From the IMG/VR virus record IMGVR_UViG_3300008113_000003, positions 1 through 64,000 of that record: a DNA stretch of 64,000 bases; one strand, written 5' to 3'. A program made the position numbers and the translations under genes. The notes beneath the pieces were generated by a model. It worked only from the letters and a program-made list of their open reading frames with translations, searched no databases and had not been told where the DNA came from. Each line of letters begins with the position of its first letter. Within the stretch, counting starts at the first letter, position 1. Positions 3,093-60,003 of the stretch are shown here, piece after piece.

Positions 3093-3497
3093 CTATTTTT
3101 GTTTATCAATTCTAATTACCGAACCCTGACCATACATTACTTGAATGTAATAAGACCCTAATTTATACATTTCACCAGTAAATTGGTTAGCGTAAATCTC
3201 ATATTCATCACCAACCTCAGAACCGTACTTCTCAGCTACCCCAAGTAAAATCCAAAATAATTTTTCACGTGGTTCATAACCTCTCCTATATTCACGATCT
3301 CTATATTTATCGGAACCATACCAGTTATCAAGATGTTCTATTGATCCGTCAATATCATCCTTAATACGATTCCACATACGATCAACCCATCGATCTTTAT
3401 ACTCGTCTTCTCGTCTAAGTTTCTCCGCAAATTTTTCCAAAGATTCTTTTCCTTCAGGGGAATCAAAGAATGCGTTTATTTCCTCAATGGTCATCAT
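3093..3497 (-). CDS. hypothetical protein
   Basis: ORF track, ATGA overlap with upstream gene. Confidence 0.65.
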   Translation of the reverse strand: MMTIEEINAFFDSPEGKESLEKFAEKLRREDEYKDRWVDRMWNRIKDDIDGSIEHLDNWYGSDKYRDREYRRGYEPREKLFWILLGVAEKYGSEVGDEYEIYANQFTGEMYKLGSYYIQVMYGQGSVIRIDKQK

Positions 3498-4237
3498 TGT
3501 TCTGTTGTTGGTTTAAGCCACATACCCGTACCAAACATGATCTCAAGTATCCTCGGGTTAATTATTCTAATCTTCTCAAACAACTCAAGGGTTTTTAACG
3601 TGTCATGTTTCATCATCTTGAATACCTCATCTCTGATTCTTTCTTGTGAAACAACCAGTTCAAGTTTATCAACCACACTGTCCATCAAACAAGTTTCCAT
3701 TATTGATGTTGAGATGGTAAATCCTTTGGTAATTGAGAATCTAAACGCTCTTAATAACCTCAACGGATCATCCAACATAGTATCTTTAGCATCCAATGGG
3801 GTGATCAACACTTTGTTCTCCAAAGCTGACATACCATCAAAAAAGTCAATGATATTACCATTCTCATCTTTTGCAAGTGCGTTCAAAGTAAAATCCCTAC
3901 GCTGTAAGTCATCATGTAAAGTCCCAGGAAGAACAATTGGTTGTCTTGTATCTTTGAAATAACCAACTTCTTTACGGGCCATAACAAAGTCAGCCACACC
4001 CTCATATTTGTGGTTCTTAGGGAATTTCGCCCTGATTGTAAAGCAATCATTTGTTACCAAGAAGATTTCAAAACCCTCTTCCTTAAGGTAATTCTCAAGC
4101 ACATCAAACATATCGGGTGCAGAGTAATGGGTCAATAGTAACTTCTCGTCAGGAACGGCAACATAGTCAACGTCCTTAGATTGAAGCCCTAAGATCTCAT
4201 CTCTTACTTTTCCACCTACTTCATAAAACTTAAACAT
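3494..4237 (-). CDS. cca: tRNA nucleotidyltransferase (CCA-adding)/poly(A) polymerase family, short form
   Basis: VGGKVRD...DVDY, DLQRRDFTLNALA, DDPLRLLRAFRF, SQERIRDE class II NTase motifs. Confidence 0.85.
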   Translation of the reverse strand: MFKFYEVGGKVRDEILGLQSKDVDYVAVPDEKLLLTHYSAPDMFDVLENYLKEEGFEIFLVTNDCFTIRAKFPKNHKYEGVADFVMARKEVGYFKDTRQPIVLPGTLHDDLQRRDFTLNALAKDENGNIIDFFDGMSALENKVLITPLDAKDTMLDDPLRLLRAFRFSITKGFTISTSIMETCLMDSVVDKLELVVSQERIRDEVFKMMKHDTLKTLELFEKIRIINPRILEIMFGTGMWLKPTTEQ

Positions 4238-8252: not shown

Positions 8253-8675
8253 TTAAGCAAGTGCTTTTGCGATTTCTCTACCAATCTCACGCTCTTTAAT
8301 TGTTGCTCTTTTATCGTGCAGTTTCTTACCACGAGCCAATGCTATTTCCATCTTAAAAACACCACGTTCATTCTTGAATATCTTGTAAGGAACGATAGTA
8401 AGGCCTTTGATTAAATCCTTTTGTAACTTAACCAGTTCTTTCTTCTTGAGTAGTAACTTTCGATCCCTGATCGGTTCGTGGCTGTAAGCGGTTCCGTTAC
8501 CAGTTATGTTAATATTTTTAACATAAAGCTCATCATCAACAAAAACGCAGAAAGCTTCAGTCATTGATATCTTACCATCCTTAATCGACTTCACCTCTGA
8601 CCCGTGGAGTTGCATACCAGCGACCTCAGTCCTGATAAACTCATATTCAAACCTAGCTTTCTTATTTACAAACAT
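8253..8675 (-). CDS. smpB: SsrA-binding protein SmpB
   Basis: NKKARFEY, EVAGMQLHGSEVKSIK, RDRKLLL, GKKLHDKR. Confidence 0.95.
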   Translation of the reverse strand: MFVNKKARFEYEFIRTEVAGMQLHGSEVKSIKDGKISMTEAFCVFVDDELYVKNINITGNGTAYSHEPIRDRKLLLKKKELVKLQKDLIKGLTIVPYKIFKNERGVFKMEIALARGKKLHDKRATIKEREIGREIAKALA

Positions 8676-11818: not shown

Positions 11819-12300
11819 ACTAATTCTAATTGATTTTTATACCACTTAGGTACGTCTCTACCCTTCCAAGAGGCAAAACCAGATTTAGCACCACAGTAAT
11901 AGTTGCGATACGACTCAACCGCATCATCAACTTTATATTCGTCAGGCATTGCTTTAGCTGGCTCAGTGAACCCTTTGTCCTCAATGTTTGGTTTATTCAC
12001 AATACACCACTCAATTACATCTTGCGACTTATGTCTTTTACCATATCGATAGGTGTATTCGTAACACAACTCAAGACCTAACTCACACAAATACAAGTAG
12101 TTAGACAAAGACTCACGGGTCCAGATTGAACACGGATGGTTCTTATGTGATAACTTGTAAGGTGCTGCGGATTGACTATCTGTTATCCAATGAACACCAC
12201 ATAACAATTGCGCTGTTTCAAGTATCATCTTTACAACGTGCTTGTCAACATGACTTTGCGCACATTTTTTAACATCGTAATCTAATAAGAATATATTCAT
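11815..12300 (-). CDS. pyrimidine-dimer DNA glycosylase/DenV-like family protein
   Basis: MNIFLLD, DKHVVKMILETAQLL, HKNHPCSIW, EYTYRYGKRH, AMPD, YRNYY. Confidence 0.75.
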   Translation of the reverse strand: MNIFLLDYDVKKCAQSHVDKHVVKMILETAQLLCGVHWITDSQSAAPYKLSHKNHPCSIWTRESLSNYLYLCELGLELCYEYTYRYGKRHKSQDVIEWCIVNKPNIEDKGFTEPAKAMPDEYKVDDAVESYRNYYCGAKSGFASWKGRDVPKWYKNQLELV

Positions 12301-26547: not shown

Positions 26548-27147
26548 ATGAAAAAAATTTTATTGTTAATATTCTTCGGATTATTACTAATCACGCAACA
26601 AGTTTTTGCGCAAAGGACTCAAGTGGCTTTTAAAAATGAACTTTTTACTGGTGTATATTCAGAAGTTTATCAACAACCACTATGGATAACATATAAAGTT
26701 TTATGTCCAACAGGCACCGCATCCAGAGAAGGTATGGATTTTTATACCAATGATAGTATAAAAACCTCAGATGATCTTGACTACGCCAACAATGAGTATG
26801 ATAAAGGTCATTTAGCCCCAGCAGCTGACTTTAACTGTGATAAAGCTATGCTATTTAAGACTTTTAGTTACTTAAATTGCGCTTTACAACAAGAAAATCT
26901 AAACCGTGGTGTTTGGAGATTCCTTGAATTACATGAAAGAGAGCTTGCAAAGGGTGGTAACGCTGTTACAGTTAAAATAGAATTAAGTTTTACAAGTGGT
27001 TCGAAAAAATTACCAACAGGTGCAACAATTCCAGATGGTTTTGTTAAAACAATTATAGTTAATAATAAAACTGTTGAGAAGTATTATTTTCCCAACACAG
27101 CCCCAACCAAAGGTAAAAAATACCAAGATTACATGATTAAGTTTTAA
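26548..27147 (+). CDS. exported DNA/RNA non-specific endonuclease (NucA/EndA family)
   Basis: Signal peptide MKKILLL...VFA; YDKGHLAPAAD, TF..LN..Q..LNRGVW..LE. Confidence 0.88.
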   Translation: MKKILLLIFFGLLLITQQVFAQRTQVAFKNELFTGVYSEVYQQPLWITYKVLCPTGTASREGMDFYTNDSIKTSDDLDYANNEYDKGHLAPAADFNCDKAMLFKTFSYLNCALQQENLNRGVWRFLELHERELAKGGNAVTVKIELSFTSGSKKLPTGATIPDGFVKTIIVNNKTVEKYYFPNTAPTKGKKYQDYMIKF

Positions 27148-27924: not shown

Positions 27925-29286
27925 ATGGCAAATTTAGGAAGAAAAATAACTAGTATTGGTACTTTAAACAGTTTTACAGCAAAAGTTGTATATGACGCTA
28001 GTACTAGATACGGTACAGCGCAAGCTAACCAAACTTTTCAAGTGGGTTATGAATATACTGGATCAAATTTCTTTAAGAGTCTTAATAGGCCACCAAAATT
28101 AAGAATTTTATCAATATTTCAACCACTTCTTAGTGGTAACCCAAACGCATCAAATGACACATATGTCGCATTCCAGGTTTATGATTATACCTTAAGCGCT
28201 TGGCGTGGGCCTTGGTGTAAAAGAGCTAACCAAAACGCTTCTTGGACATACGTTGATTATTTTGTTACAACAATTGATTCATTTGGTAGGAAATATGGTA
28301 ACTACTACACTGGGGCTAATTCTATTGCCACAACCTTTACCCCGCCAACAGCACTTTTTAGCCAAAGCGCTTCTCTATCTTTAACCACATTAGCTGGCAG
28401 AACAGTAACAGCCATAGCTGGTCACAACCCTAGCGCTTTTGTTCTTGGTGGTAGCACCAACAAACTGTACCATTTTCATGGTTTTTTAACTTTAGCTGGT
28501 TATAGCGGTACATGGTGTTTTTATTCTATATCCGCTAATGGTGCTGGTATCGGTTTTAACCATCTATTGGACGTGGCACCGTATAATACTGGTACCTATC
28601 CAAACGTTTTACCCGCAACTAATAAATTAGCAAGTGAGTGGCGATTAGCAACTTTTTGTAATATAGATAATTTGGGTTATAGTCCGAGGATTAGAATTAA
28701 TAGTACTGGTCTTGGTCCTGTAAAAGCTTATTTTGGTCAAGATCCAGGTAGTATGTTTCCTAACGGAGTTGATAATATTAACGTTTTTGAGGCTGAGGTT
28801 TGGTGTACCTATGACCCTGGGGATCCAGCTACTTTCTTTTTAACACCTCTTTGGTCACCAGGTGGTAGCACTGAGGAATCGGAACAGGGGGTTGAGGGTA
28901 CGCAAGCTGCTAACTATGCACCAGCTGGTTGGTATGGTACATCTGCTGAAAATTCATATGCGTATTGGGATGGTTTGGGTGCCTGGACACCTAACTCTTA
29001 CGCCACATACCAAGTGGCACCAACTAGTACAGAATTTACTTACTATGGTTTTTACCAATCACAGGATCCTATGGAAGTTTGTTCAACAGGACCTCAAGGT
29101 TTGGCAATGATTGGTTACTACGATACCTCAACAGGTTTTGATATGATGACGCAATTATTTTCTGACAGTTTACTACAAAACCCTATTTCGACTTTTGTAC
29201 CAAATAGATTCTATTACAATCAAACAGATGGTGTGGCATTTTCAGCTGATCCAAGTGCTAGAGTGCAAGTAACATTTAAATGTTAA
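27925..29286 (+). CDS. probable virion/fibre-associated protein
   Basis: Aromatic/G/T-rich composition; APAGWY..YWDG motif. Confidence 0.55.
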   Translation: MANLGRKITSIGTLNSFTAKVVYDASTRYGTAQANQTFQVGYEYTGSNFFKSLNRPPKLRILSIFQPLLSGNPNASNDTYVAFQVYDYTLSAWRGPWCKRANQNASWTYVDYFVTTIDSFGRKYGNYYTGANSIATTFTPPTALFSQSASLSLTTLAGRTVTAIAGHNPSAFVLGGSTNKLYHFHGFLTLAGYSGTWCFYSISANGAGIGFNHLLDVAPYNTGTYPNVLPATNKLASEWRLATFCNIDNLGYSPRIRINSTGLGPVKAYFGQDPGSMFPNGVDNINVFEAEVWCTYDPGDPATFFLTPLWSPGGSTEESEQGVEGTQAANYAPAGWYGTSAENSYAYWDGLGAWTPNSYATYQVAPTSTEFTYYGFYQSQDPMEVCSTGPQGLAMIGYYDTSTGFDMMTQLFSDSLLQNPISTFVPNRFYYNQTDGVAFSADPSARVQVTFKC

Positions 29287-29867
29287 ATAATCTTATGAAT
29301 GATTTTGTATTTTGCGGCTTCTTGGGCTGACATATACCAATCTTCTTTTCGATCTTTGTAATCTTCCATTTTATTAACAGGTATTTTAGTTCTACTTAAA
29401 ACGTAGTCGTCATATACCTTTTGAAGTCTTTCACATTCTTTAAGATTTTGTTTTGCCCCAGTAATATTACCCCAAAATACATCTGATATCTCATGATACA
29501 TCAATGTTGCTGTTTTATGGGCAAATCTAACGTGAGTTGAGATGTAAATAATAAAACCCATGGACATTGCGGAACCGTAGCAATACCCATGGATTGGTGT
29601 TTTTGAGTGTTCAATCGCAGCAATCAAAGCGAAACCATCATAAACCGAACCACCAAAACTATTAACAACTAACTTAATCGGTTCCCTTTCATAATCCTGT
29701 AAATCTTCCTCAAACTCATCATCAAGAGTGTTGATGTCAAGAATTGATTCAATTATATCTGCAACGCTTGATGCGGTAATGTCTGAACTTAATACGATGT
29801 TCCTGGAATTATTATCCTTTACATCAATATTTGATTTAAATTTTTTCTTATACGATTTTTTTAACAT
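29283..29867 (-). CDS. ClpP-like serine protease (divergent)
   Basis: VNSFGGSVYDG, AMSMG (Ser), MYHE (His), DWYMSAQEA (Asp). Confidence 0.85.
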   Translation of the reverse strand: MLKKSYKKKFKSNIDVKDNNSRNIVLSSDITASSVADIIESILDINTLDDEFEEDLQDYEREPIKLVVNSFGGSVYDGFALIAAIEHSKTPIHGYCYGSAMSMGFIIYISTHVRFAHKTATLMYHEISDVFWGNITGAKQNLKECERLQKVYDDYVLSRTKIPVNKMEDYKDRKEDWYMSAQEAAKYKIIHKII

Positions 29868-29869: not shown

Positions 29870-30181
29870 CTACATGATTTCATCAAGGGATTCCGTAATT
29901 ATCTTAACGGGTTGTACACCTAATGTTGTTTTAACAATCTCGTTATTTTTAACATATTTTAATGTTGGTATTGATCTAACTCCGTAGGCTCTTGAGAGTT
30001 CCTCGTTTTGATCAACATTAATTTTGCAAAAAACAACGTCTTTTTGCTCTTGACTAACCTGCTCTAGGATAGGCATTAATTGTTTGCATGGCCCACACCA
30101 ATCGGCATAAAAATCCATAACTACCGCACTATTCTCACTAAGAATCTGCTCTAAATGTTCTTTGTTTTCTATCTGTATCAT
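29870..30181 (-). CDS. trxA: thioredoxin
   Basis: DFYADWCGPCK, VRSIPT. Confidence 0.93.
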   Translation of the reverse strand: MIQIENKEHLEQILSENSAVVMDFYADWCGPCKQLMPILEQVSQEQKDVVFCKINVDQNEELSRAYGVRSIPTLKYVKNNEIVKTTLGVQPVKIITESLDEIM

Positions 30182-31220: not shown

Positions 31221-31622
31221 TTAATAATCAAAAATAAATTTTGTGGTATTGTCTTTTTCGCTCTTACCCTTTTTAATAACTTCTTTGATATTAACACCAG
31301 CCTGATTGAATAATTTCATTATCTTTTTCTTAGTGACAATACCCGTTTTATTGCTATCGCAACTATACACAACATACATAGGGGTAAGTTCTTCAGTATT
31401 ATATTGGAAGACGAAGAATAACTTCTTTTTAAACAAAGATAACTCATTAAAAAATGAGTTATCAAGTGATGACATTAAATGATTTTGTTTTTTTGTTAAG
31501 GTTATAAGTATGTGAAAGTTATAAAAATTCATGAGCATTGTTGCATGCTCATACTTTTTAATATCCAAATACCTTATTACATTGTCATCCACCTTTATAA
31601 AGGTGGCGTATATTTGTCCCAT
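31221..31622 (-). CDS. hypothetical protein
   Basis: ORF track. Confidence 0.55.
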   Translation of the reverse strand: MGQIYATFIKVDDNVIRYLDIKKYEHATMLMNFYNFHILITLTKKQNHLMSSLDNSFFNELSLFKKKLFFVFQYNTEELTPMYVVYSCDSNKTGIVTKKKIMKLFNQAGVNIKEVIKKGKSEKDNTTKFIFDY

Positions 31623-31945
31623 TAGAATGAGAATTTGTAGGTCTCCTCAAGATCACTCTTTGTTATGTTACTTAATAACCAAATATGTTCTTCCTTGATT
31701 AAGATTAAAGTTCCAAAACCCTGGGCAAAATTTTTATAATTATTAACGTTAGCCTCGTTGTAATCACCGCTTTTTAATATATCAACAAACACTCTCCCAT
31801 TGATGATATATTCTGGTCTAATCAGAAACCTTTCGTTAACGAAAAATATTTCAGCATTTTCTTTTACGCTTAAATTATTCTTAAGACACCAATTTAAAAA
31901 AGATCTGTTAAGCTCAATATTTATTTTTCTATTCTGATTACTCAT
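31622..31945 (-). CDS. hypothetical protein
   Basis: ORF track. Confidence 0.55.
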   Translation of the reverse strand: MSNQNRKINIELNRSFLNWCLKNNLSVKENAEIFFVNERFLIRPEYIINGRVFVDILKSGDYNEANVNNYKNFAQGFGTLILIKEEHIWLLSNITKSDLEETYKFSF

Positions 31946-32008
31946 ACATATAAGTATCTGCTTTTAATACATTAATATAGAAAAAGGGGGTTCTTTGACT
32001 TTATTTTA

Positions 32009-32398
32009 TTAGTCCGTTAACAAGTCTTTTGACTCATTAGTATTGTTGTTTATTTTAGTTAGCATTTTGTCGAATCTTGAATCAACGTATCGATTCAGTT
32101 CGTCAACATGTCGGTGAGCTTCTTGGTCAACCCTTTCGAGCTCTCTTGATAGGTCGGTAGATCTTTCATGAATTGTTCGATGTACCTCATCAAATTGTTT
32201 GTGAATTTCTCTTCGGATTTCATCTAAATCACGAACAAGGTCATTTCTACCTTCTTGATTATATCTTTCGATATGGTTTATTGTATCTTCTTGGTTTGAT
32301 TGTTTTTTCGTTAATCTAGCAACCATCACAACCCCGATCACAAGTAAAATTGCAACCAAAGCAGTAACAATTCCTAAACTGAAATAAATTGTTTCCAT
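32009..32398 (-). CDS. membrane-anchored coiled-coil protein
   Basis: N-terminal TM, heptads, YVDSRFDK. Confidence 0.65.
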   Translation of the reverse strand: METIYFSLGIVTALVAILLVIGVVMVARLTKKQSNQEDTINHIERYNQEGRNDLVRDLDEIRREIHKQFDEVHRTIHERSTDLSRELERVDQEAHRHVDELNRYVDSRFDKMLTKINNNTNESKDLLTD

Positions 32399-32447
32399 GT
32401 TTAAAAATTTTTTTTAATGTATTATCTCAAAGAACCCCTTTTTCTTG

Positions 32448-32536
32448 CGGAAGGTACTGGATTCGAACCAGTGGATCCCTTTTCGGAGATCAACAGTTTA
32501 GCAAACTGCCGCATTCGGCCTCTCTGCCAACCTTCC
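32448..32536 (-). tRNA. tRNA-Ser(GCT)
   Basis: GGAAGGT acceptor, GCAGT-TTGCTAA-ACTGT, long variable arm; CCA not encoded. Confidence 0.92.
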
Positions 32537-32540
32537 GATG

Positions 32541-32614
32541 TGGTCCCACTTGGGATCGAACCAAGCACCTACTGATTATGAGTCAGTTGCTCTAACCGAA
32601 TGAGCTATAGGACC
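32541..32614 (-). tRNA. tRNA CAT anticodon, probably Ile2 (lysidine type)
   Basis: GGTCCTATAGCTCA...ACTGA-CTCATAA-TCAGT; Ile2 vs elongator Met is inferred. Confidence 0.85.
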
Positions 32615-32619
32615 AAATT

Positions 32620-32704
32620 CGGTGGGGAGTAGTCACGGCCAGCTCTGATCCTTCCTCACCTATCTTATAACCGTGGCAAAATCTGGCTCGACCCTAGTTA
32701 TAAT
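32620..32704 (-). ncRNA. candidate structured RNA between tRNAs
   Basis: Hairpins TATAAC/GTTATA and GGTGAGGA/TCCCCACC; loops carry complementary GCCAG/CTGGC. Confidence 0.45.
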
Positions 32705-32705
32705 G

Positions 32706-32793
32706 TGGCGGAGAGTGAGGGATTCGAACCCCCGTTAGCTTTCACTAAAACAGTTTTCAAGACTGCCGCATTCGACCGCTCTGCCAACTCTCC
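32706..32793 (-). tRNA. tRNA-Ser(TGA)
   Basis: GGAGAGT acceptor, GCAGT-CTTGAAA-ACTGT, CCA encoded. Confidence 0.93.
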
Positions 32794-32827
32794 GTATTCT
32801 TTTATAAATATAAGTAAAAAATTTTAA

Positions 32828-33292
32828 TTAAGCAAGTTTTTCCTTATCTTTTTCAATGGTTTTCTTTGATACAAGCCCTCTACCGTATTTAGTTATACGT
32901 TCTTTGTATCTTTCTTTAACATGTGGGCTAATAGGGATTGGTGTACCATCTTCATCAATCCTAACGAATTTAATGTTTGTGTGTGTAACAATTTCCTGGT
33001 CACCTGTACGAACATTGTGTTTCCTAACTTCGATATATAAAGACACCGATGTATTACCAAACTCAATAACTTTACCATAGATCTTAAGTAATGCGTTAAC
33101 TTTAACGGCTTTCTTAAAGATTAATTCATCAATCTTGATGGTAACAACCATTGGTGTATCACAAATCTGCGCAGCGTATGCGGCTGAAGCGTCATCAATT
33201 AAACTCACTAGTGTACCACCGAACATATTGTCGTGTACACCTATATCACCCTTCTTACAAATGTAGGTAGTTATTAATTCCATCTGTTCCAT
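32828..33292 (-). CDS. acyl-CoA thioesterase (hotdog fold, YciA-like)
   Basis: NMFGG.LVSLIDDA, GNTSV, FVRIDEDG.P. Confidence 0.85.
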   Translation of the reverse strand: MEQMELITTYICKKGDIGVHDNMFGGTLVSLIDDASAAYAAQICDTPMVVTIKIDELIFKKAVKVNALLKIYGKVIEFGNTSVSLYIEVRKHNVRTGDQEIVTHTNIKFVRIDEDGTPIPISPHVKERYKERITKYGRGLVSKKTIEKDKEKLA

Positions 33293-33545
33293 TAAACAAT
33301 TTTAAGTACTTATTCCTAATTTCTAAAGATTTTCTTTTAAGACTGAAGGACTCACTGTCAATTGCCTGAACAATAATTTGTTCTTCTTCTTCAGTTACGT
33401 GTTCTAACATAAAATCAAATTCGTTGTCAGTAAGATTGTAAAATGATAAAAACATATCATCCATTAAATCAAACACACCATGTTGTCCTGGTTGGTTTGA
33501 TTTTAAACACGCTTGCACCTCTGGCCTTAAAACTTTCATATTCAA
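33255..33545 (-). CDS. hypothetical protein
   Basis: ORF track. Confidence 0.55.
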   Translation of the reverse strand: MNMKVLRPEVQACLKSNQPGQHGVFDLMDDMFLSFYNLTDNEFDFMLEHVTEEEEQIIVQAIDSESFSLKRKSLEIRNKYLKLFNGTDGINNYLHL

Positions 33546-33581
33546 AAAATTAGGGCGATATAAAATAATACCGCCCGTTAG

Positions 33582-33964
33582 TGGAGATGAGGGGATTCGA
33601 ACCCCTGTCTTGTCTAGCCATTAATTAACCCTCGTTCACATGCTTATTCAGTTTTGCTAAACTGACAAACTTCACAATTCCCTTATTTTTACGGTTCGGT
33701 TTACTGAGAACTAATCTTCCGCTCGCTGTTACGGTAGCGAATACCGTTTTGCAGTTTTGGGTGACTGTTGTCAGCCAAGCTTTCGCTTAGACTAATTCTA
33801 GATCTGCAAACTCAACAGACTGACCGTTAAACGTGATGTTTCCGTCAGCATCGATAAAGCTCTCGCCATTTAAAACTGTATATAGGTTATTAAAGTGTTT
33901 CCAATACTAACACTGCATGCATCAAATTAAAGAACGTATCTATCAATCAATTCCAGTCATCCCC
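33582..33964 (-). ncRNA. ssrA: tmRNA; tag ORF 33787-33867 encodes (A)GESFIDADGNITFNGQSVEFADLELV
   Basis: 5' GGGGATG pairs with 3' CATCTCC-A with G3:U70; T-arm GGGGTTCGAATCCCC; 383 nt; no anticodon arm. Confidence 0.92.
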
Positions 33965-33970
33965 ATGTTC

Positions 33971-34057
33971 TGGTACCGAGAGCGGGACTCGAACCCGCAC
34001 GGACGTAATGTCCAAGGGATTTTAAGTCCCTCGTGTCTACCATTTCACCACCTCGGC
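33971..34057 (-). tRNA. tRNA-Leu(TAA)
   Basis: AGGGA-CTTAAAA-TCCCT, long variable arm, CCA encoded. Confidence 0.93.
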
Positions 34058-34071
34058 ATTGAAATCTGTTA

Positions 34072-34079
34072 CAAAAGTA
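34072..34079 (-). promoter_or_regulatory. Bacteroidota-type -7 promoter element (TACTTTTG) for tRNA-Leu/tmRNA
   Basis: Matches TAnnTTTG with TTG about 20 nt upstream; same motif recurs before many genes. Confidence 0.7.
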
Positions 34080-34169
34080 AGTGCTAAAAGTTGAATAAAC
34101 AAGCGTTTTAGAAAAAAAACCTAATTTTTTTATTAAAATAGGTTATATTTATGGATAAATACTTCATAA

Positions 34170-34949
34170 ATGAATTTAATCCAGGAAATAAAAAGAATGA
34201 GACAGATTATGTCTGTTATTAATGAAGAAAAAACCAACATTTCAATATCATGCCCAAAATGTGATCATGGTTGGACGATTGATAGTGAGGACAAAGATCC
34301 TTACCTATGCCATACATGTGGTTACGACAAACTTGAGGGTAAGTATGAACTTGAAAAACTCGCTAAATGGAAAAAAGAAAATAATGTCAATGAGAATGAA
34401 GATGAGGATAATGAAGATGGTCAATATAATGATTACACCTTTGACATTAGAACTGACTTAGCTGAACTTAAACAAGAATTGATTAGTGTTGGTGTAAATG
34501 ATAACACCAGATTACATTTAACACATGATAGTGAATTAAAAAAAATAAACACACCACAAAGAGCTTATGGGCCAAAACCAGATGGTCTTTGGTATTGCGT
34601 TGGGTTTGGTTGGTTGGATTTTACAACTCGTGATTTCCAATCATTTTATACAGTTGGTAACCGTGTATATCCGTTTGAGATAAGTTTAGATGGTTTAAAT
34701 GTTCTTAAGATAACTAACTACGAAGAATTAGTTGCATTTGAAAAGGCTTATTCAGCACCACCTCAATTTAAGTTTAGAGACAATTTTGATATTAACTGGT
34801 CTAGAGTCGCTGAAAGTTATGATGGTATTGAAATAGCACCTTACCTATATGAGGCTAGGTATGAACATAGATGGTACCAGGGCTGGGACGTGGCATCTGG
34901 ATGTATCTGGAACACAGCTAATTTAAAATCAAAAAAACTCCTACAATAA
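34170..34949 (+). CDS. Zn-ribbon-containing late protein
   Basis: CPKC...CHTC; KPDGLWY..WDVASGCIW domain; TATTTAT upstream. Confidence 0.65.
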   Translation: MNLIQEIKRMRQIMSVINEEKTNISISCPKCDHGWTIDSEDKDPYLCHTCGYDKLEGKYELEKLAKWKKENNVNENEDEDNEDGQYNDYTFDIRTDLAELKQELISVGVNDNTRLHLTHDSELKKINTPQRAYGPKPDGLWYCVGFGWLDFTTRDFQSFYTVGNRVYPFEISLDGLNVLKITNYEELVAFEKAYSAPPQFKFRDNFDINWSRVAESYDGIEIAPYLYEARYEHRWYQGWDVASGCIWNTANLKSKKLLQ

Positions 34950-35001
34950 AGGTATTTATTAAAAATACAAAGTATTTATAATATAGTAAAATTGTTTAAA
35001 C

Positions 35002-35769
35002 ATGAAAATTAAATTAACCTTAGATCAAATAAAGAATTTAGTTAATGAAGGTAAATTACCTTATAGATTCTTGGAAGACAATAACCCAGAAGACAATGAG
35101 CCAACAGGTGATGAAATGCCTGATGATGGTGAGGGTGAGGGTAATGATGATGAAACACCAAAAGAGCCTGATATGTCACCTGATGATCAAATCAGAAACA
35201 TTAAAGGTGGTAGCATCTTAGATTTCTTGGAAAATATGCCAAAAAGAGGTTCTTTCGGTTATATTTTTTACACAGCACCAGTATCTGTTAATAAATTTTA
35301 TATTAACGACAACGGTGAGAAAGAATTAAACCCAATGGCTGGTAAATTATTTAAAAACACTGTTTTCAAATTCCAATTCGACAAATCTTACAATAGAGCG
35401 GTTGAAATTAAAAACGAGAAGACTGGTGATGATTACGAAGTTGGTGCAAGAAATTCTGGTTACAAAGATGTTGAGGGTTACAACATGCTTTTATCTGGTA
35501 AAAGTGGTTTATATTTCCCAATTGTTTTAGATGATTTTAGAACTGATCAAAATAGTAATTACGCTTTAATGAACGATGCTGGTAATTACGAAGTGGTTTC
35601 AAAAGAAGAGATTCAAAAATATTTAAAACCAGTTTCAGGTACGTCAACATTCGTTGACTACAGATCATTGATTGTTCAAAGAGTTTTCCAAATTAGAGCT
35701 GGGGGTAGAACATTTATAAACTCAGAATTCCCTTACGAATATTTAGGACCGAAGAATTTACAGAAATAA
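35002..35769 (+). CDS. late hypothetical protein with acidic linker
   Basis: TATTTAT upstream; MKIKLT...LVNEG leader. Confidence 0.65.
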   Translation: MKIKLTLDQIKNLVNEGKLPYRFLEDNNPEDNEPTGDEMPDDGEGEGNDDETPKEPDMSPDDQIRNIKGGSILDFLENMPKRGSFGYIFYTAPVSVNKFYINDNGEKELNPMAGKLFKNTVFKFQFDKSYNRAVEIKNEKTGDDYEVGARNSGYKDVEGYNMLLSGKSGLYFPIVLDDFRTDQNSNYALMNDAGNYEVVSKEEIQKYLKPVSGTSTFVDYRSLIVQRVFQIRAGGRTFINSEFPYEYLGPKNLQK

Positions 35770-35797: not shown

Positions 35798-36829
35798 TTA
35801 CTTATTAAATCGTTTAAACGATGCTTCAGTTATTAGATTATACTTGGCACGTCCGATAAACTCACTCAGGTCTTTCGCATCAGTGTAACTCATAGCTGAT
35901 GTTAGATAATGTTTAAAGTTATCAACCCAACCATCTATAGTATATTCAACAGCATGCACCCTTACAACACCTTCGGATGTTTTAACATCTTTCTTACCCC
36001 AACTCGCTTGTACTTCTTTTGTTGACATACCTCTAAATTTCTTGTGGAGTTTACCACCAGCTTTAAAAAATTCCTTCGCTTTTAAATTATATTGGTTAAT
36101 CTTTTCACCATCCTCATCAACTGTCTCACCAGCACTTTCCAGGGCTTTATTAAAGATCGAACCAAGCATTACATAGTCAGCACCTAAAGCCAACGCTTTA
36201 ATCACATCGGAATACTTCTTGAAACCACCGTCTGCTACGATATAAGCCGCTTTTTGTAGCGTACAGGAAACTTTATATGTTTCAACTATCAAAGATGCCA
36301 TTGGGTACCCAACCCCTGTGTGTACGGTTGTTAAACAACCACCACCGTTCCCAATCCCAATTCTAACATAATCGGCACCAGCGTCAGATAACAAAGCGTA
36401 TGTTTCTGGATTAGCAACATTACCAACCATTAAAACCAACGAATCACCGTATTTTTCTTTAGATTTTTTAGTTAATTCGTGTACAGCTGGCATGTGTCCA
36501 TTTGCAACATCCAAAAGAATATAATGTTTTAAATCTTTTGGTTGATTGTTTTTAATAAACACCTCTTCAAATTGATTAAGTCCGTATGAAACCCACTCAC
36601 TAAAACTCGTCTTAGGGTGTAGGTTAGTAACAGCTGTTCTTGGTAAAATTACGTTAATACACTCTTCTTTAAAAAAGTGAGCATTATGTGTGTTAACAAC
36701 AGTATCCATAGGTGCTGTAAATAACGGCAACCCACCTTTGTTATCAAATGGGTATATTTCCGATCTGGAGTTAATTCTTGTTACCGCATTGGGCATCAAT
36801 AGCACATCATCGAAGTCAAATAAAGTCAT
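35798..36829 (-). CDS. GMP reductase/IMP dehydrogenase family
   Basis: DFDDVLL, APMDTV, DVANGH, GIGNGGGCLT, ADGG, FRGMST, SEG. Confidence 0.88.
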   Translation of the reverse strand: MTLFDFDDVLLMPNAVTRINSRSEIYPFDNKGGLPLFTAPMDTVVNTHNAHFFKEECINVILPRTAVTNLHPKTSFSEWVSYGLNQFEEVFIKNNQPKDLKHYILLDVANGHMPAVHELTKKSKEKYGDSLVLMVGNVANPETYALLSDAGADYVRIGIGNGGGCLTTVHTGVGYPMASLIVETYKVSCTLQKAAYIVADGGFKKYSDVIKALALGADYVMLGSIFNKALESAGETVDEDGEKINQYNLKAKEFFKAGGKLHKKFRGMSTKEVQASWGKKDVKTSEGVVRVHAVEYTIDGWVDNFKHYLTSAMSYTDAKDLSEFIGRAKYNLITEASFKRFNK

Positions 36830-37865: not shown

Positions 37866-38807
37866 TTACTTAACCCATTTCATTATAGTCGAACCCCAGG
37901 CCCAACCTGAACCAATCGCTGTAAATACGATGATATCACCTTTATTAATCTGTTTATTCATAATAGCGTCATCCAATGCTATTGGTACTGATGCCCCAGC
38001 TATATTCGCATATTTGTTCATAACAGTTTTAACCTTGTCCATGGGCAAACCAACTTCGTTAGCAACTATTTTTAATATATTAATACTTGGTTGATGTGGT
38101 ATGAGCATATCTACTTCCTCAGCTTTAATATTTGATTTCTCAAGTACGCTTTTTATTGAGGTTGGTAGCACCTTAATCGCTTGTTCCCAAACCTCTTTAC
38201 CCCTCATCACAAATGGTGAATCAAGTGGCATATTAAAACCAGTCATACCTGTATCTTTACCATTAGCACTACTTTCAAATGACATCCACCCTTCTTCATC
38301 ATAACCTAAAACAATCGCACCAGCTCCGTCACCAAAAAATACGGAGTGTTGATTAGTCCAATCTGTATGTTTTGAGTAAGCTTCTGTTGCGATAATTAAA
38401 ACGTTTTTATGTACTTTATGACTTATAAGTGGTATCATAAGGTTAATTGCGTAAACAAAGCCAGAGCAAACAGCGTTTATATCAAAAGCTGGTATATCTC
38501 TATCGATGTTAAATTTATTATGTATAATACATGCTGTTGATGGTGATATTTTCTCTGGGCTAGATGTTGCAACAATAATTAAGTCAATATCATCAATTCC
38601 CATATTAGCTGATTCAAGCGCCTTTAACGCTGCTTTATAACCCATTTCAGATGGGGATTCTTCAGCAACTCTCCTCTCATCAATACCAAGTTTATCTTTA
38701 ATCCAGCTATGCGTTGTGTCAACACTTTTCTCAAGATCATAATTAGTTACAACCTTACTTGGTAAGTGGGAACCAACACCTTTTATACCAACATTATTAT
38801 AAACCAT
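37866..38807 (-). CDS. fabH: 3-oxoacyl-ACP synthase III
   Basis: AFDINAVCSGF, FGDGAGA, PHQPS, NIAGAS catalytic C/H/N. Confidence 0.92.
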   Translation of the reverse strand: MVYNNVGIKGVGSHLPSKVVTNYDLEKSVDTTHSWIKDKLGIDERRVAEESPSEMGYKAALKALESANMGIDDIDLIIVATSSPEKISPSTACIIHNKFNIDRDIPAFDINAVCSGFVYAINLMIPLISHKVHKNVLIIATEAYSKHTDWTNQHSVFFGDGAGAIVLGYDEEGWMSFESSANGKDTGMTGFNMPLDSPFVMRGKEVWEQAIKVLPTSIKSVLEKSNIKAEEVDMLIPHQPSINILKIVANEVGLPMDKVKTVMNKYANIAGASVPIALDDAIMNKQINKGDIIVFTAIGSGWAWGSTIMKWVK

Positions 38808-39339
38808 AATCTAACATTTTATTCTCCCTATTTTTAATTAATTTAAGTGGATTACCACCATATATACCATAAGCAGGTAGGTTTTTACTAACCAAACTTA
38901 AGGCACCAATTGCGGTACCCTCTTCGATCGTTACCCCAGGTAAAACAACGACATTACAACCCAAAACAACATATTTTTTTAAATGTACCGTCTGGTGCCT
39001 TACATTCGTATATTCTTTTGGGACTGTTGGCCCAACCAAGTAATTACCCGAAAAATCATCAGATGACGAATAAATTGAGACTTTACCTGATATCTGTGTG
39101 TGATCTTCACAAACTATTGCCCCAGAACCAATTAAATGCGCATAACATGCGATATGTATATAGTTACCTAATTTAATACCACCTTCACCAGCACTTAAAA
39201 TACAAAAATCATCTATTCTAACATTCGAACCAATCTCAATGTTTTTAGCATTATAAATTGACGCTTTATCTGATATTAAAACGTTTTCACCTAACGATTT
39301 AAAACCCATTTTTTCTAACTCACCTCTACTGTAAAACAT
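38797..39339 (-). CDS. hexapeptide-repeat sugar acyltransferase
   Basis: IGSNVRIDDFC, SSDDFSG, LPGVTIEEG, GGNP. Confidence 0.88.
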   Translation of the reverse strand: MFYSRGELEKMGFKSLGENVLISDKASIYNAKNIEIGSNVRIDDFCILSAGEGGIKLGNYIHIACYAHLIGSGAIVCEDHTQISGKVSIYSSSDDFSGNYLVGPTVPKEYTNVRHQTVHLKKYVVLGCNVVVLPGVTIEEGTAIGALSLVSKNLPAYGIYGGNPLKLIKNRENKMLDYGL

Positions 39340-39340
39340 A

Positions 39341-39994
39341 TTATCTATTCGCTTTTGTATAAACCTCAAATTTTGATAAATCTGGGTAAGGTAATTCTAA
39401 ATCTTCATTATGTTTTGGTTTACCTTGTATATCATAAAATTGCCCCATAAGTAGTAAACCTCTAGTTGCTAACTCTGGCATCATATAGTAATTCCACCCC
39501 AACATATCCAAATTATCATCATGATAAGAACATTCACGTCTACCAGAATATCTGGCACGTTTAAACCAAAGATAAGCTTCGTGACTATCTGTCAAAATAG
39601 CACCACCCTTTGATAATTTGAAGTGTTTGTAAGGCCCTGTAAATGAGATACACATGTGTGTCCCAGTTTTATACATATTGTTTGTAAAACTTAATGCGGA
39701 ATCCCAAACATTACTACCTTTAAGTTCGTAGGCACCTTTGATGGTTTTACCTTCAACAGGTTCAAAATCTACTTTTAAACCATTATGTATGATTTCACAA
39801 GGAACCGATGGATACGTCCTACTAGGTATAGTAATTGTATCAACTTTTATAGATTTTTTTACATTTTTTTCGTAATATAACGCCAAGAATAAAGCGTTAC
39901 TTTGGTTATCAACTGTAACCACATAAGGAGCACCAGTATAATCGGATAGTGCTTTTTCGAAATCTTCAGTTATTTTATAAACACCGTTTGCCAT
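39341..39994 (-). CDS. DegT/DnrJ/StrS sugar aminotransferase (short form)
   Basis: FEKAL, TYPSVP, DSA, SF..YK, KGGAIL, GWNY.M. Confidence 0.82.
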   Translation of the reverse strand: MANGVYKITEDFEKALSDYTGAPYVVTVDNQSNALFLALYYEKNVKKSIKVDTITIPSRTYPSVPCEIIHNGLKVDFEPVEGKTIKGAYELKGSNVWDSALSFTNNMYKTGTHMCISFTGPYKHFKLSKGGAILTDSHEAYLWFKRARYSGRRECSYHDDNLDMLGWNYYMMPELATRGLLLMGQFYDIQGKPKHNEDLELPYPDLSKFEVYTKANR

Positions 39995-40063
39995 ATATTT
40001 TTTTATATAATTATATGAAAATAAACGGAAAAAACAAGTGTTTAGAATAACATATTGGAAAAA

Positions 40064-40140
40064 TGGAGCCTGAAGAGGGATTCGAACCCCCGACATCCTC
40101 ATTACAAGTGAGGCGCTCTGGCCAGCTGAGCTATTCAGGC
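40064..40140 (-). tRNA. tRNA-Thr(TGT)
   Basis: CCTCA-CTTGTAA-TGAGG; CCA encoded. Confidence 0.93.
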
Positions 40141-41687: not shown

Positions 41688-41759
41688 CTGTGATGGGGAA
41701 TTCCGAGATCCCGACCTGAGAGTTAACAGCTCCCTGCTCTGCCTCTGAGCTACATCACA
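41688..41759 (-). tRNA. tRNA-Asn(GTT) with non-canonical T-loop
   Basis: GGGAG-CTGTTAA-CTCTC; T-arm GGGATCTCGGAATTCCC lacks GTTC. Confidence 0.82.
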
Positions 41760-41764: not shown

Positions 41765-41879
41765 CGGGGATGAGAGGAATCGAACCTCTGGTTCAGGCTT
41801 GAGATGCAAAATTATATGCTGTATGGAATCTCATCAGATTCACTTTTTTTACAGCGTGTTACCACTACACCACACCCCC
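41765..41879 (-). ncRNA. tRNA-like RNA whose anticodon arm is replaced by a TGAGAT-..ATACAGCA..-ATCTCA module
   Basis: GGGGGTG/CATCCCC-G acceptor, D arm, AGAGGTTCGATTCCTCT T-arm. Confidence 0.7.
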
Positions 41880-59334: not shown

Positions 59335-60003
59335 TTATTTCTTTGGTTTTCGATTCATTACCGAGTCGATCATCCCGTATTCCTTAGCTTCATCAGCTCT
59401 CATCCAGTAATCTCTCTCAGAATCAGCGTACACTTTATCATAGGTTTGACCAGTGTGGTGAGAAATGATATCGTACAATTCTTTCTTCAATTTACCAATC
59501 TCTCTTGCTGTGATCTCGATATCAGTTGCTTGGCCTTCGGCACCACCCAATGGTTGGTGAATCATAACCCTTGAATGTGGTAATGCGTAACGTTTACCTT
59601 CAGCGCCAGCGCAGAGTAATACAGCGGCCATTGATGCCGCCAATCCTGTGCAAATTGTCGATACTTCTGGTTTAATGTATTGCATTGTGTCGTAGATACC
59701 CAAACCAGAATAAACAGAACCCCCTGGAGAGTTGATGTAGATCTGAATACCAGCTTCTTTGTCAATTGATTCCAAGAAAAGTAATTGTGCTTGAATAATG
59801 TTAGATACTTGATCGTTAATACCAGTACCCAAGAAAATAACCCTCTCCATCATCAATCTTGAGAATACGTCCATTTGTGTAACGTTCATTTCTCTTTCTT
59901 CAATAATATAAGGGGTTATTGAACTGTTAAATCTGCTAAGTGTTTCAGACTTAATTCCCATGTGCTTTGTAGCGTACTGATTAAACTCTTTTCCTAAATT
60001 CAT
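59335..60003 (-). CDS. clpP: ATP-dependent Clp protease proteolytic subunit (Bacteroidota-like)
   Basis: TPYIIEER, MDVFSRLM, YINSPGGSV, AASMAA, MIHQP, ERDYWM. Confidence 0.96.
   Translation of the reverse strand: MNLGKEFNQYATKHMGIKSETLSRFNSSITPYIIEEREMNVTQMDVFSRLMMERVIFLGTGINDQVSNIIQAQLLFLESIDKEAGIQIYINSPGGSVYSGLGIYDTMQYIKPEVSTICTGLAASMAAVLLCAGAEGKRYALPHSRVMIHQPLGGAEGQATDIEITAREIGKLKKELYDIISHHTGQTYDKVYADSERDYWMRADEAKEYGMIDSVMNRKPKK

What the first reader, a model, noticed from the sequence alone, without database searches (positions are those of the whole stretch)
33582..33964. Phage tmRNA with a long non-canonical tag ending LELV, alongside its own SmpB and two ClpPs
Seen: predicted tag (A)GESFIDADGNITFNGQSVEFADLELV (26 codons; resume codon GGC inferred); smpB at 8253-8675; clpP at 59335-60003; a divergent ClpP at 29283-29867. 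Established: Bacteroidota tags start GE and typically end YALAA, and C-terminal AA is the ClpX degron. Inference: the phage rescues stalled ribosomes but either spares tagged products from host ClpXP or routes them to another protease. This complements the tRNA-stress theme.
Basis: partly seen in the sequence, partly recalled or inferred. Interest (0 to 1): 0.72.

Follow-up and report, generated by a model that had tools for sequence, protein, structure and literature searches.

The report
Phage tmRNA with long non-AA tag
A large freshwater phage of Bacteroidota carries its own, demonstrably expressed ribosome-rescue RNA (tmRNA) plus SmpB, and its tag is three times longer than its hosts' and lacks the usual Ala-Ala end; this is real, but it is a further example of a pattern already present in other phage tmRNAs such as that of mycobacteriophage Bxz1.

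Summary
Rfam finds a full-length tmRNA at 33579-33964 on the minus strand (60.7 bits, cut-off 47), although ARAGORN misses it at default settings. The resume context and the first two codons match Algoriphagus-type host tmRNAs. Four distinct clade members keep 26 codons. ARAGORN reads the same frame and stop in a relative whose tmRNA is only 69% identical. Four metatranscriptomes hold exact contigs of the RNA with sharp ends. smpB, a canonical clpP and a divergent ClpP-fold gene are present as stated.

The LELV end is not fixed, because relatives end LELA or LEVA. The contig has no Clp unfoldase and no Lon. A near-complete phage in another clade has a long-tag tmRNA without its own SmpB or ClpP. 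Long tags (18-45 codons) are common in huge-phage tmRNAs and most end AA or VA. Bxz1 already has a 25-codon acidic tag ending ALV. Thirty-five Bacteroidota tags are 8-10 codons long and 34 end (L/M)AA. What happens to tagged proteins remains untested.

Verdict: a new member of a known kind, of moderate interest.

The parts
33582..33964 (-). One-piece tmRNA (ssrA) gene, 383 nt up to the discriminator A. CCA is not templated: the next bases are CUA, and CAA in relatives.
   Evidence: Rfam RF00023, 60.7 bits, full length. The acceptor stem has a G3:U pair. The T-arm has two compensatory pairs and H2 pair 50/323 changes C-G to U-A. Exact RNA contigs span 33582/3-33956 in four metatranscriptomes.
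33880..33914 (-). Pseudoknot PK1 (tmRNA nt 51-56/66-71 and 58-64/79-85). A 12-nt single-stranded linker follows and ends in the resume context UUAAAU.
   Evidence: Pair check on the clade alignment: stem 1 is invariant. Stem 2 forms 6 of 7 pairs, with a G.U to G-C change in G002 and L281.
33790..33867 (-). Tag reading frame of 26 codons. The resume codon is GGC at 33867-33865. The encoded tag is (A)GESFIDADGNITFNGQSVEFADLELV.
   Evidence: The tag is 85% identical to L281 here, against 39% in the PK2-4 region.
33787..33789 (-). UAA stop codon of the tag. It sits in a small GNRA-capped hairpin inside H5.
33819..33849 (-). Hairpin inside the tag ORF (nt 116-121/141-146 and 124-127/133-136).
   Evidence: RNAalifold. 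Pair 124/136 is A-U, C-G or G-C in different members.
33765..33818 (-). H5-like helix (CUGUUG nt 147-152 with CAACAG nt 195-200). It encloses the last tag codons and the stop.
   Evidence: Both hexamers are conserved, also in L281, where the partner lies at nt 184-189.
33971..34057 (-). tRNA-Leu(UAA), 6 nt upstream of the tmRNA, with CCA encoded. The Leu(UAA)-tmRNA linkage is conserved across the clade.
   Evidence: ARAGORN and Rfam. The same order is seen in G001, G002, L271 and L281.
33543..33576 (-). Terminator-like hairpin plus T-run, 5 nt after the tmRNA 3' end.
   Evidence: 9-pair stem with 5 G-C pairs, then TAATTTTTTG.
34072..34079 (-). TACTTTTG, which matches the Bacteroidota -7 promoter motif TAnnTTTG, 14 nt upstream of tRNA-Leu. 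This is a possible promoter of the Leu-tmRNA unit.
   Evidence: Read directly from the sequence. The motif itself comes from my own knowledge of Bacteroides and Flavobacterium promoters. This is weak evidence.
8253..8675 (-). smpB (140 aa from the ATG).
   Evidence: TIGR00086, 153.6 bits. It is 61% identical to Algoriphagus SmpB, and the GKKLHDKR tail is kept.
59335..60003 (-). Canonical clpP (222 aa) with an intact Ser-His-Asp triad.
   Evidence: 245 bits to a solved ClpP.
29283..29867 (-). Divergent ClpP-fold serine protease (194 aa). The triad is intact and the N-terminal ~55 residues cannot be aligned. Its role is open: ClpP paralogue or maturation protease.
   Evidence: It is conserved in G001, G002 and G098.
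3494..4237 (-). PolyA_pol-family nucleotidyltransferase (the CCA-adding enzyme family). It could complete the CCA-less tmRNA and tRNAs.
   Evidence: PF01743, 64.1 bits. About 9 of 14 phage tRNA genes lack an encoded CCA.

Best explanation
This is a working, phage-encoded trans-translation module in a huge phage (206 kb contig, estimated 69% complete, so roughly 300 kb) whose host is probably in Cytophagales or a related Bacteroidota group.

How the RNA is made. The tmRNA is transcribed behind tRNA-Leu(UAA) and ends at its own terminator. It is trimmed to the discriminator base and then receives CCA. The host has the enzyme for this, and the phage encodes a nucleotidyltransferase of the CCA-adding family. 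This part is inferred.

How it acts. By analogy with known tmRNAs, host AlaRS charges it through the G3:U pair, it binds the phage SmpB, and it enters ribosomes stalled on broken mRNAs. Translation resumes at GGC and stops at UAA inside H5. The nascent chain gains a 27-residue tail, A-GES(F/Y)IDADGNI...ADLE(L/V)(V/A).

What the tag is. It is a lengthened derivative of the host-type 'GE(T/S)xYAMAA' tag. It keeps the resume context and GE, but replaces the YA(L/M)AA degron with a conserved, strongly acidic body (net charge -6) and a variable aliphatic dipeptide.

Which steps are shown and which inferred. Gene, fold, frame, clade conservation and RNA expression are shown here. The rest is inferred. 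My inference, held at about 45%, is that ribosome recycling is the main benefit to the phage. I also infer that the tag still marks products for removal, and that it does so as a composite signal: a conserved body that docks an adaptor or protease, plus a non-polar C-terminus. I do not think it acts as a strong stand-alone ClpX Ala-Ala degron. Any ClpP-dependent degradation would need a host unfoldase.
For: - The Rfam match is full length.
- Covariation supports the T-arm, H2 and the hairpins. PK1 and H5 hold in the clade alignment.
- The resume context and first two codons are homologous to Algoriphagus tmRNA.
- All four distinct clade sequences have 26 codons, although L281 is only 69% identical overall and 39% identical in PK2-4.
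- ARAGORN reads the same frame in L281.
- Pooled over five long-tag phage clades, variable columns fall 16/15/34 at codon positions 1/2/3, P=0.0012, so these tags evolve as translated sequence.
- Exact RNA contigs span 33582/3-33956 at depth 7-62, while flanking bins are at 0-2 and silent stretches at 0, in four metatranscriptomes.
- SmpB is intact.
- tmRNA, SmpB and ClpP also occur together in the near-complete huge phages G027 and G105, which belong to other clades.
- Host-phylum tags are 8-10 codons long and 34 of 35 end (L/M)AA.
- In an E. coli pentapeptide screen, Ala-Ala ends 91% of the top 100 tags. Leu and Val are depleted at the last position, and strong tags are neutral or positive (PMC10862746).
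- There is a precedent for a long tag going with a change of protease: Mesoplasma and Lon (PMC9382460).
Against: - Nothing here measures charging, tagging or degradation.
- The clade has only four distinct sequences, and its own third-position excess (3/3/7) is not significant alone.
- A 30-nt block of the tag (nt 140-169) is invariant even at wobble positions, and a hairpin with covariation lies inside the ORF. Part of the conservation is therefore RNA-structural and not peptide-level.
- The terminal dipeptide varies (LV, LA, VA), which could also mean the end is simply unconstrained.
- LVA- and AAV-type ends are still degraded in E. coli (PMC10862746, PMC9382460).
- No adaptor or unfoldase candidate was found in the contig.
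- E. coli degron rules may not carry over to Bacteroidota.
- The host assignment rests on SmpB and tmRNA similarity only.
Confidence: 0.55

Rival explanations
1. The tag is an ordinary proteolysis tag. The non-polar C-terminus with its free carboxylate (LV, LA or VA) is still read by host ClpXP, and also by ClpAP, FtsH or a Tsp-like protease. The long body is only a spacer or a rate enhancer. The phage's canonical ClpP merely adds proteolytic capacity during infection.
For: Most other long phage tags end in classical VAA, LAA or IAA, or in xVA, so long tags and ClpX-type ends clearly coexist. Two of the three ends in this clade finish in Ala. LVA-type tags are good ClpXP substrates and AAV is degraded more slowly (PMC10862746, PMC9382460). 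The phage ClpP is canonical with an intact triad, and no phage unfoldase exists.
Against: No member of the clade has Ala-Ala. The residue at position -3 from the C-terminus is Glu, and the last five residues carry a charge of -2. Acidic tags and tags ending in Val or Leu are disfavoured in the E. coli screen (PMC10862746). In canonical tmRNAs the last residues are the best-conserved part of the tag, and here they are the variable part.
Confidence: 0.25
2. The module works for rescue only. Ribosome release is the sole selected function and the tag has no proteolytic role. Its sequence and length are held by RNA-structural needs of the mRNA-like domain, or it simply makes truncated products soluble and harmless.
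For: A hairpin with a three-state covarying pair lies inside the ORF, and a 30-nt block is invariant even at wobble positions. The C-terminal dipeptide varies. G101 has a long-tag tmRNA but no ClpP or SmpB of its own. From my own knowledge: growth of lambda-immP22 hybrid phage needs charged tmRNA but not a degradable tag (Withey and Friedman).
Against: The third-position excess across five long-tag clades (P=0.0012) and the conservative amino-acid replacements point to constraint on the peptide. Codon number is conserved in all four distinct sequences of this clade, and also among the equal-length sequences compared within each of the other clades, although a rescue-only ORF could be much shorter. 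The end stays aliphatic.
Confidence: 0.15
3. The RNA is a decoy or inhibitor of host trans-translation, for example by titrating host SmpB or occupying stalled ribosomes. Alternatively it is a decaying host-derived ssrA remnant.
For: The Rfam score is low (60.7 bits) compared with 114-121 bits for the four Algoriphagus/Cognataquiflexum (Cyclobacteriaceae) tmRNAs and up to 198 bits across the Bacteroidota searched. A phage element consisting of the tRNA-like domain only is known in mycobacteriophage DS6A (PMC4131195).
Against: All functional parts are present and covary. The ORF is open and length-conserved in a 69%-identical relative. The phage brings its own intact SmpB. The RNA is abundant and discrete in natural samples.
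Confidence: 0.05

Closest known systems
Mycobacteriophage Bxz1 (Bixzunavirus) tmRNA
   Same: It is a phage-encoded one-piece tmRNA (RF00023, 73.9 bits). ARAGORN gives the tag ATDTDATVTDAEIEAFFAEEAAALV: 25 codons, strongly acidic, ending in Leu-Val and not Ala-Ala. It is listed among phages with ssrA in PMC4131195.
   Different: The host is an actinobacterium and there is no sequence similarity to this tmRNA. ARAGORN finds it at default settings. I did not test whether Bxz1 carries smpB or clpP.
Host-lineage tmRNA of Cyclobacteriaceae (Algoriphagus and relatives)
   Same: It has the same resume context (AUAAAU|GGC GAA) and the same first two tag residues, GE. Its SmpB is the closest cellular relative, at 61% identity.
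   Different: The tag has 9 codons, GETSYAMAA. The RNA scores 114-121 bits on RF00023 and is about 400 nt long. The tRNA-like domain differs in sequence (GGUUUUGACA against GGAAUUGAUU here).
tmRNA plus SmpB of published huge phages (Al-Shayeb et al. 2020, PMC7162821; LR756504, 636 kb)
   Same: These are huge phages with translation genes that include tmRNA and SmpB. The SmpB of LR756501 is 55% identical and that of LR756504 is 45% identical. LR756504 has a 24-codon tag and ARAGORN misses it at default settings.
   Different: The LR756504 tag ends in the classical AVAA. Tag sequences were not discussed in that paper.
Prevotella Lak megaphage tmRNAs
   Same: They are Bacteroidota-infecting megaphages with SmpB (44-45% identical) and a tmRNA that default ARAGORN misses.
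   Different: The tags are short and canonical, DDEI(D/E)FRMAA, at 10 codons.
Mesoplasma/Mycoplasma long ssrA tag read by Lon
   Same: It is a long tag whose recognition moved from ClpXP to another protease, as described in PMC9382460.
   Different: It is cellular and ends NYAFA. The switch there goes with loss of ClpXP in the organism. Here no Lon was found in the phage contig and the host's protease set is unknown.

Membership tests
tmRNA (Rfam RF00023, one-piece) | Full-length covariance-model match above the gathering score | tested here: met
   60.7 bits against 47, model positions 1-374 of 374.
tmRNA (Rfam RF00023, one-piece) | tRNA-like domain: 7-bp acceptor stem with G3:U70, discriminator A, T-arm, no anticodon arm | tested here: met
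   Pairs 1-7/377-383 with G3:U381. The T-arm 360-364/372-376 has two compensatory pairs.
tmRNA (Rfam RF00023, one-piece) | Long helix H2 and pseudoknot PK1 just upstream of the resume codon | tested here: met
   H2 spans 9-50/323-352, with pair 50/323 changing C-G to U-A. Both PK1 stems form, followed by a 12-nt linker. Most PK1 pairs never vary, so the covariation support for PK1 is thin.
tmRNA (Rfam RF00023, one-piece) | Short internal ORF without a start codon, resuming after a U-A-rich context and stopping in or near H5 | tested here: met
   GGC at nt 98 after UUAAAU, and UAA at nt 176-178 inside helix 147-152/195-200.
tmRNA (Rfam RF00023, one-piece) | Expressed as a discrete stable RNA | tested here: met
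   Exact contigs 33582/3-33956 in four metatranscriptomes, with flanks near zero. These are assembled contigs without strand information.
tmRNA (Rfam RF00023, one-piece) | Alanylation, SmpB binding and tagging activity | not testable with these tools
   Only the identity elements (G3:U, discriminator A) and a cognate smpB can be seen.
Canonical proteolysis tag (ClpX C-motif 1, ...LAA-COOH) | C-terminal Ala-Ala preceded by a non-polar residue | tested here: not met
   The ends are LELV, LELA and LEVA. By contrast, 34 of 35 Bacteroidota tags end (L/M)AA.
SmpB (TIGR00086 / PF01668) | Score above the equivalog cut-off, with the C-terminal basic tail present | tested here: met
   153.6 bits against 119.1. 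The tail GKKLHDKRATIKEREIGRE aligns to Algoriphagus SmpB.
ClpP (gene at 59335-60003) | ClpP-family score above the cut-off and a Ser-His-Asp triad | tested here: met
   PF00574 263.7 bits; PRK00277 295.9 against 249; PRK14514 360.6 against 361, which is just under. The triad aligns to a solved ClpP.
ClpP (gene at 29283-29867) | ClpP equivalog or subfamily score above the cut-off | tested here: not met
   39-66 bits against cut-offs of 228-361. The Pfam fold-level match is 83.7 bits. The triad is present.
ClpP-related head maturation protease (NF045542), for the gene at 29283-29867 | Score above the cut-off and a position in a head-assembly module | tested here: not met
   69.9 bits against 120. 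The neighbours are thioredoxin and auxiliary enzymes, not head genes. The best PHROG is phrog_94 'head maturation protease', but the canonical ClpP hits that same family more strongly, so this does not discriminate.
Mollicutes-type Lon-directed long ssrA tag | Long tag together with absence of ClpXP and recognition by Lon | tested here: inconclusive
   The length is similar (27 residues counting the Ala). No Lon is in the phage contig. A ClpP is present. The host's proteases were not examined.

The most novel reading that the evidence does not exclude
Long, clade-specific tags that drop the Ala-Ala end are an adaptive and repeatedly evolved feature of phage tmRNAs, seen here in a Bacteroidota huge phage and independently in mycobacteriophage Bxz1. 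On this reading they take rescued polypeptides out of the host ClpXP queue. They would work as an orthogonal degron read through the conserved tag body by a phage factor or a phage-ClpP-containing protease, or as a non-degradative 'parking' tail, so that the phage controls what happens to truncated proteins during infection.
Probability: 0.2. Interest if true: 0.7.

Novelty: new member of a known kind. Interest (0 to 1): 0.45.

Why it matters
Phage tmRNAs are known: 2.3% of phage genomes in one survey (PMC9004378) and huge phages in PMC7162821. Those surveys used ARAGORN, which at default settings misses this clade, the G027 clade, the Lak phages and the 636 kb phage. Phage trans-translation is therefore under-counted. 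I also found no paper in the searchable library that analyses the tags of phage tmRNAs.

The comparison made here gives a simple, testable pattern. Many huge-phage tmRNAs carry tags of 18-45 codons that evolve as coding sequence, while their host phylum uses 8-10 codons. A few phage tags, in this clade and in Bxz1, have also lost the Ala-Ala end.

If these tags have altered protease specificity, they would say something about how phages manage proteostasis and stalled ribosomes, for instance under RNA-cleaving host defences. They could also supply orthogonal degradation tags, as the Mesoplasma tag did. If they are ordinary degrons, the finding is a well-documented annotation with direct evidence of expression in nature.

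Tried and rejected
1. ARAGORN's alternative tag AKRYSLP (nt 214-237) is rejected. Relatives have an indel there, and the stem changes are compensatory (CGGUA/UACCG, AGAU/AUCU, CGAU/AUCG), so the stretch is structural and part of the PK2 region.

2. The two other frames are rejected. They give (M)ARALSMLTETSRLTVSLLSLQI and WRELYRC. Variable columns peak at codon position 2 or 1 in those frames, and they do not fit the host-type resume context.

3. The phage ORF at 11815-12300(-) also ends in LELV, which might have pointed to a natural substrate sharing the degron. Its G002 homologue ends RFELC, so I treat this as coincidence.

4. The tag peptide has no Pfam match even at E<=10 and no significant similarity to any phage ORF.

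5. ClpX (TIGR00382), AAA_2, Lon_C and RtcB were not found in the contig. The contig is estimated at 69% complete, so absence from the phage is not proven. A PF00004 AAA hit at 188504-188851 was not characterised. My one attempt used wrong coordinates and failed.

6. The sigma-70 promoter scan showed no enrichment, with 6 sites against 6.6 expected. That scan does not cover Bacteroidota promoters.

7. My single metagenome scan used a mis-specified pattern, with two variable bases where the window has one. It retrieved other clades and probable cellular tmRNAs, not the window's clade. The corrected pattern was run on viral contigs only.

8. DNA searches of GenBank phages with the tmRNA found only T-arm-sized matches.

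9. I did not run complex prediction, because I make no protein-protein binding claim that a pass would change. I did not send a hand-typed structure string for pair counting, and checked those pairs by script instead.

Full report
**What is there**

Rfam's tmRNA model matches window 33579-33964 on the minus strand over its whole length, at 60.7 bits against a gathering score of 47, E=2.8e-21. ARAGORN does not report it at default settings. At a relaxed threshold (-ps70) it finds the same gene but proposes a different tag, which it marks as not identified.

The RNA begins GGGGAUG, which pairs with CAUCUCC at the 3' end. The third pair is G:U and the discriminator is A. CCA is not templated. The bases after the discriminator are CUA here and CAA in relatives.

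**The reading frame**

Reading from GGC at 33867 gives GESFIDADGNITFNGQSVEFADLELV, with UAA at 33789-33787. Four lines of evidence support this frame:
- The Rfam alignment places the consensus resume codon on this GGC.
- The nearest cellular SmpB proteins are those of Algoriphagus and other Cyclobacteriaceae, at 61% identity. The tmRNAs of those genomes read AUAAAU|GGC GAA ACU UCU UAC GCC AUG GCU GCC UAA. Resume context and first two codons are therefore shared with the phage's UUAAAU|GGC GAG.
- Relatives from viral contigs keep exactly 26 codons. G001 and L271 read GESYIDADGNITFNGQSVEFADLELV, G002 reads GESYIDADGNIVLDGQSVEFADLELA, and L281 reads GESYIDADGNIVFEGQSVEFADLEVA. Variable columns fall 3/3/7 on codon positions 1/2/3 in this frame only, and the replacements are conservative (F/Y, T/V, F/L, N/D/E, L/V, V/A).
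- The L281 tmRNA is only 68.5% identical overall and 39% identical in the PK2-4 region, yet 85% identical in the tag ORF. ARAGORN at default settings calls L281 and reads the same frame and stop.

ARAGORN's alternative tag in the window lies in a stretch that has an indel in relatives and shows compensatory stem changes, so it is structural.

**Anatomy**

- RNAalifold on the four distinct sequences recovers the acceptor stem, the T-arm (two compensatory pairs), H2 (pair 50/323 changes C-G to U-A) and PK1 stem 1.
- PK1 stem 2 (nt 58-64/79-85) forms, with a G.U to G-C change in two members. A 12-nt linker then leads to the resume codon.
- CUGUUG (nt 147-152) pairs with CAACAG (nt 195-200, or nt 184-189 in L281). 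This helix encloses the last codons and the stop, as H5 does.
- tRNA-Leu(UAA), with an encoded CCA, lies 6 nt upstream. This linkage is kept in all clade members.
- A terminator-like hairpin and T-run follow 5 nt after the 3' end.
- A TACTTTTG motif lies 14 nt before tRNA-Leu and fits the Bacteroidota -7 promoter consensus. That reading rests on my own knowledge and is weak evidence.

**Expression**

Six freshwater and riverine metatranscriptomes hold 36-50% of the sampled words of a 1 kb stretch centred on the gene. I laid four of them on 31500-35500.
- They contain contigs identical to 33582/3-33956, with 0 differences at depth 7-62.
- Neighbouring bins are at 0-2, and the long coding stretches on both sides are at 0.
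- DNA carry-over would cover the stretch evenly, so this is a discrete, abundant RNA.
- Its 3' boundary lies at the predicted discriminator base.
- The missing eight 5' bases coincide with adapter read-through in one run.
- Contigs carry no strand information.

**Companion genes**

- smpB (8253-8675, minus strand) passes the equivalog cut-off and keeps the C-terminal tail.
- clpP (59335-60003, minus strand) is canonical, with an aligned Ser-His-Asp triad.
- The gene at 29283-29867 has the ClpP fold and the triad. It falls below every ClpP cut-off and below the head-protease cut-off, its first ~55 residues cannot be aligned, and it sits among auxiliary genes, not head genes. Its role stays open.
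- The contig has a large terminase and is a virus record estimated at 69% complete.
- It has no ClpX or AAA_2 unfoldase and no Lon.
- It does encode a PolyA_pol-family nucleotidyltransferase at 3494-4237. This fits the fact that the tmRNA and about 9 of 14 tRNA genes lack a templated CCA.

**How unusual is the tag?**

ARAGORN finds a tmRNA in all 35 Bacteroidota genomes whose tmRNA loci I extracted (5 with the closest SmpB plus the 30 best-scoring of a phylum sample). The tags are 8-10 codons long. Thirty-four end (L/M)AA and one ends LVA. Only seven start GE.

| tmRNA source | Tag length (codons) | C-terminal end |
|---|---|---|
| This clade | 26 | LELV, LELA, LEVA |
| G027 clade | 30 | ASVA, AFVA |
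| G105 | 20 | KVAA |
| 406-nt clade | 22 | VAVA |
| L276 | 18 | VAVA |
| L272 | 21 | VVAA |
| L207 | 21 | EVVA |
| AEELS... clade | 24 | A(V/I)AA |
| GKN... clade | 35-45 | VAA, LAA |
| 636 kb phage LR756504 | 24 | AVAA |
| Prevotella Lak phages | 10 | RMAA |
| Bacillus phage G | 13 | LQVA |
| Mycobacteriophage Bxz1 | 25 | AALV |

Pooled over five long-tag clades, variable columns are 16/15/34 at codon positions 1/2/3 (P=0.0012). Long tags are therefore a common, translated feature of huge-phage tmRNAs, and an acidic long tag ending in Leu-Val has a published precedent in Bxz1 (PMC4131195 lists that gene). What sets this clade apart is that none of its members has Ala-Ala and that the last two residues vary.

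**What the tag probably does**

Nothing here measures degradation. In an E. coli screen of C-terminal pentapeptides, Ala-Ala ended 91% of the top 100 tags. Leu and Val were depleted at the last position. Strong tags were neutral or positive, and LVA-type ends worked well (PMC10862746). AAV is a slower variant of LAA, and the long Mesoplasma tag is read by Lon (PMC9382460).

By those rules ...ADLELV should be a weak stand-alone ClpX signal but not necessarily inert, and LELA or LEVA may do better. The conserved length and body argue that the peptide matters. Part of that conservation is RNA-structural, however. A hairpin inside the ORF has a pair that takes three Watson-Crick states, and a 30-nt block has no wobble changes.

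tmRNA, SmpB and ClpP recur together in near-complete phages of two other clades, G027 and G105. G101, at 89% complete, has a 35-codon-tag tmRNA without either protein, so no obligatory link to a phage ClpP exists.

I therefore favour a rescue module whose tag is a composite removal signal with weakened ClpX-type recognition, at about 45%. An ordinary ClpXP tag comes next at about 25%, then a rescue-only tail at about 15%.

**Novelty**

Phage tmRNA and SmpB are documented (PMC4131195, PMC7162821, PMC9004378). The searchable literature gave no analysis of phage tag sequences. This is a new clade of a known kind. Its unusual tag has a precedent, and it comes with good evidence of expression in nature.

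Noticed in passing
window 33819-33849 (tmRNA nt 116-146): A hairpin lies inside the tag ORF. Pair 124/136 is A-U (window, G001), C-G (G002) or G-C (L281). The 'synonymous' Gly9 wobble base is therefore coupled to codon 13 (TTT, TTG or TTC; Phe or Leu). Some tag conservation, and one amino-acid change, are driven by RNA structure.
   Followed up: partly
window 33582-33970, RNA run X15: One metatranscriptome contig (419 nt, depth 61.9) joins 33970 back to 33582. That makes a 389-nt circle of the 6-nt 5' leader plus the tmRNA up to the discriminator base. It could be a ligated or circularised processing intermediate, a tandem copy in a relative, or a library or assembly artefact. I could not check it.
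   Followed up: no
window 33660-33935, RNA runs X15, X16, X17, X20: Further RNA contigs match parts of the tmRNA with 5-8 differences. One replaces 33731-33862, which includes most of the tag ORF, with 126 other letters. Relatives with different tag regions are therefore expressed in the same waters.
   Followed up: no
L076/G027, L255, L260, L295-L297 and others: ARAGORN at default settings misses many phage tmRNAs that Rfam finds: this clade, the G027 clade, the Lak phages and the 636 kb phage LR756504. Published phage surveys that used ARAGORN (PMC7162821, PMC9004378) probably under-count them.
   Followed up: partly
window 3494-4237 (-): The phage encodes a PolyA_pol-family nucleotidyltransferase, of the CCA-adding enzyme family (64.1 bits). 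About 9 of the 14 ARAGORN tRNA genes in the window lack an encoded CCA, as does the tmRNA.
   Followed up: partly
window 41688-41759 and 41765-41879 (-): Rfam calls two more tRNA-like genes that ARAGORN does not (46.5 and 43 bits). The second is 115 nt long, so it may carry an insertion or intron.
   Followed up: no
window 11815-12300 (-): A 161-aa ORF ends ...NQLELV, the same last four residues as the tag. Its homologue in G002 ends ...RFELC, so this is probably chance.
   Followed up: yes
window 7079-8167, 8680-9273, 23475-24158, 26548-27147, 29870-30181, 32828-33292, 35798-36829, 37866-40102: The region is rich in auxiliary genes. They include a thymidylate synthase matched in two stretches (possibly an insertion), two FkbM-type methyltransferases, a non-specific endonuclease, thioredoxin and a 4HBT thioesterase. 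There are also a GMP-reductase/IMPDH-like gene, a FabH-like ketoacyl synthase, a hexapeptide transferase and a DegT-type aminotransferase.
   Followed up: no
window 58068-59270 (-): A collagen-like Gly-X-Y repeat protein with tail-fibre PHROG matches lies directly beside clpP.
   Followed up: no
L193-L253 (metagenome contigs): A group of tmRNAs about 336 nt long shares the 5' motif GGGGAUGAnnUGGAAUUGAUU with phage tmRNAs but has short canonical tags (GNAEYAMAA, GNSEYAMAA, GETQLAMAA). They may be the cellular source lineage of some phage tmRNAs, or small phage versions. Their origin was not determined.
   Followed up: no
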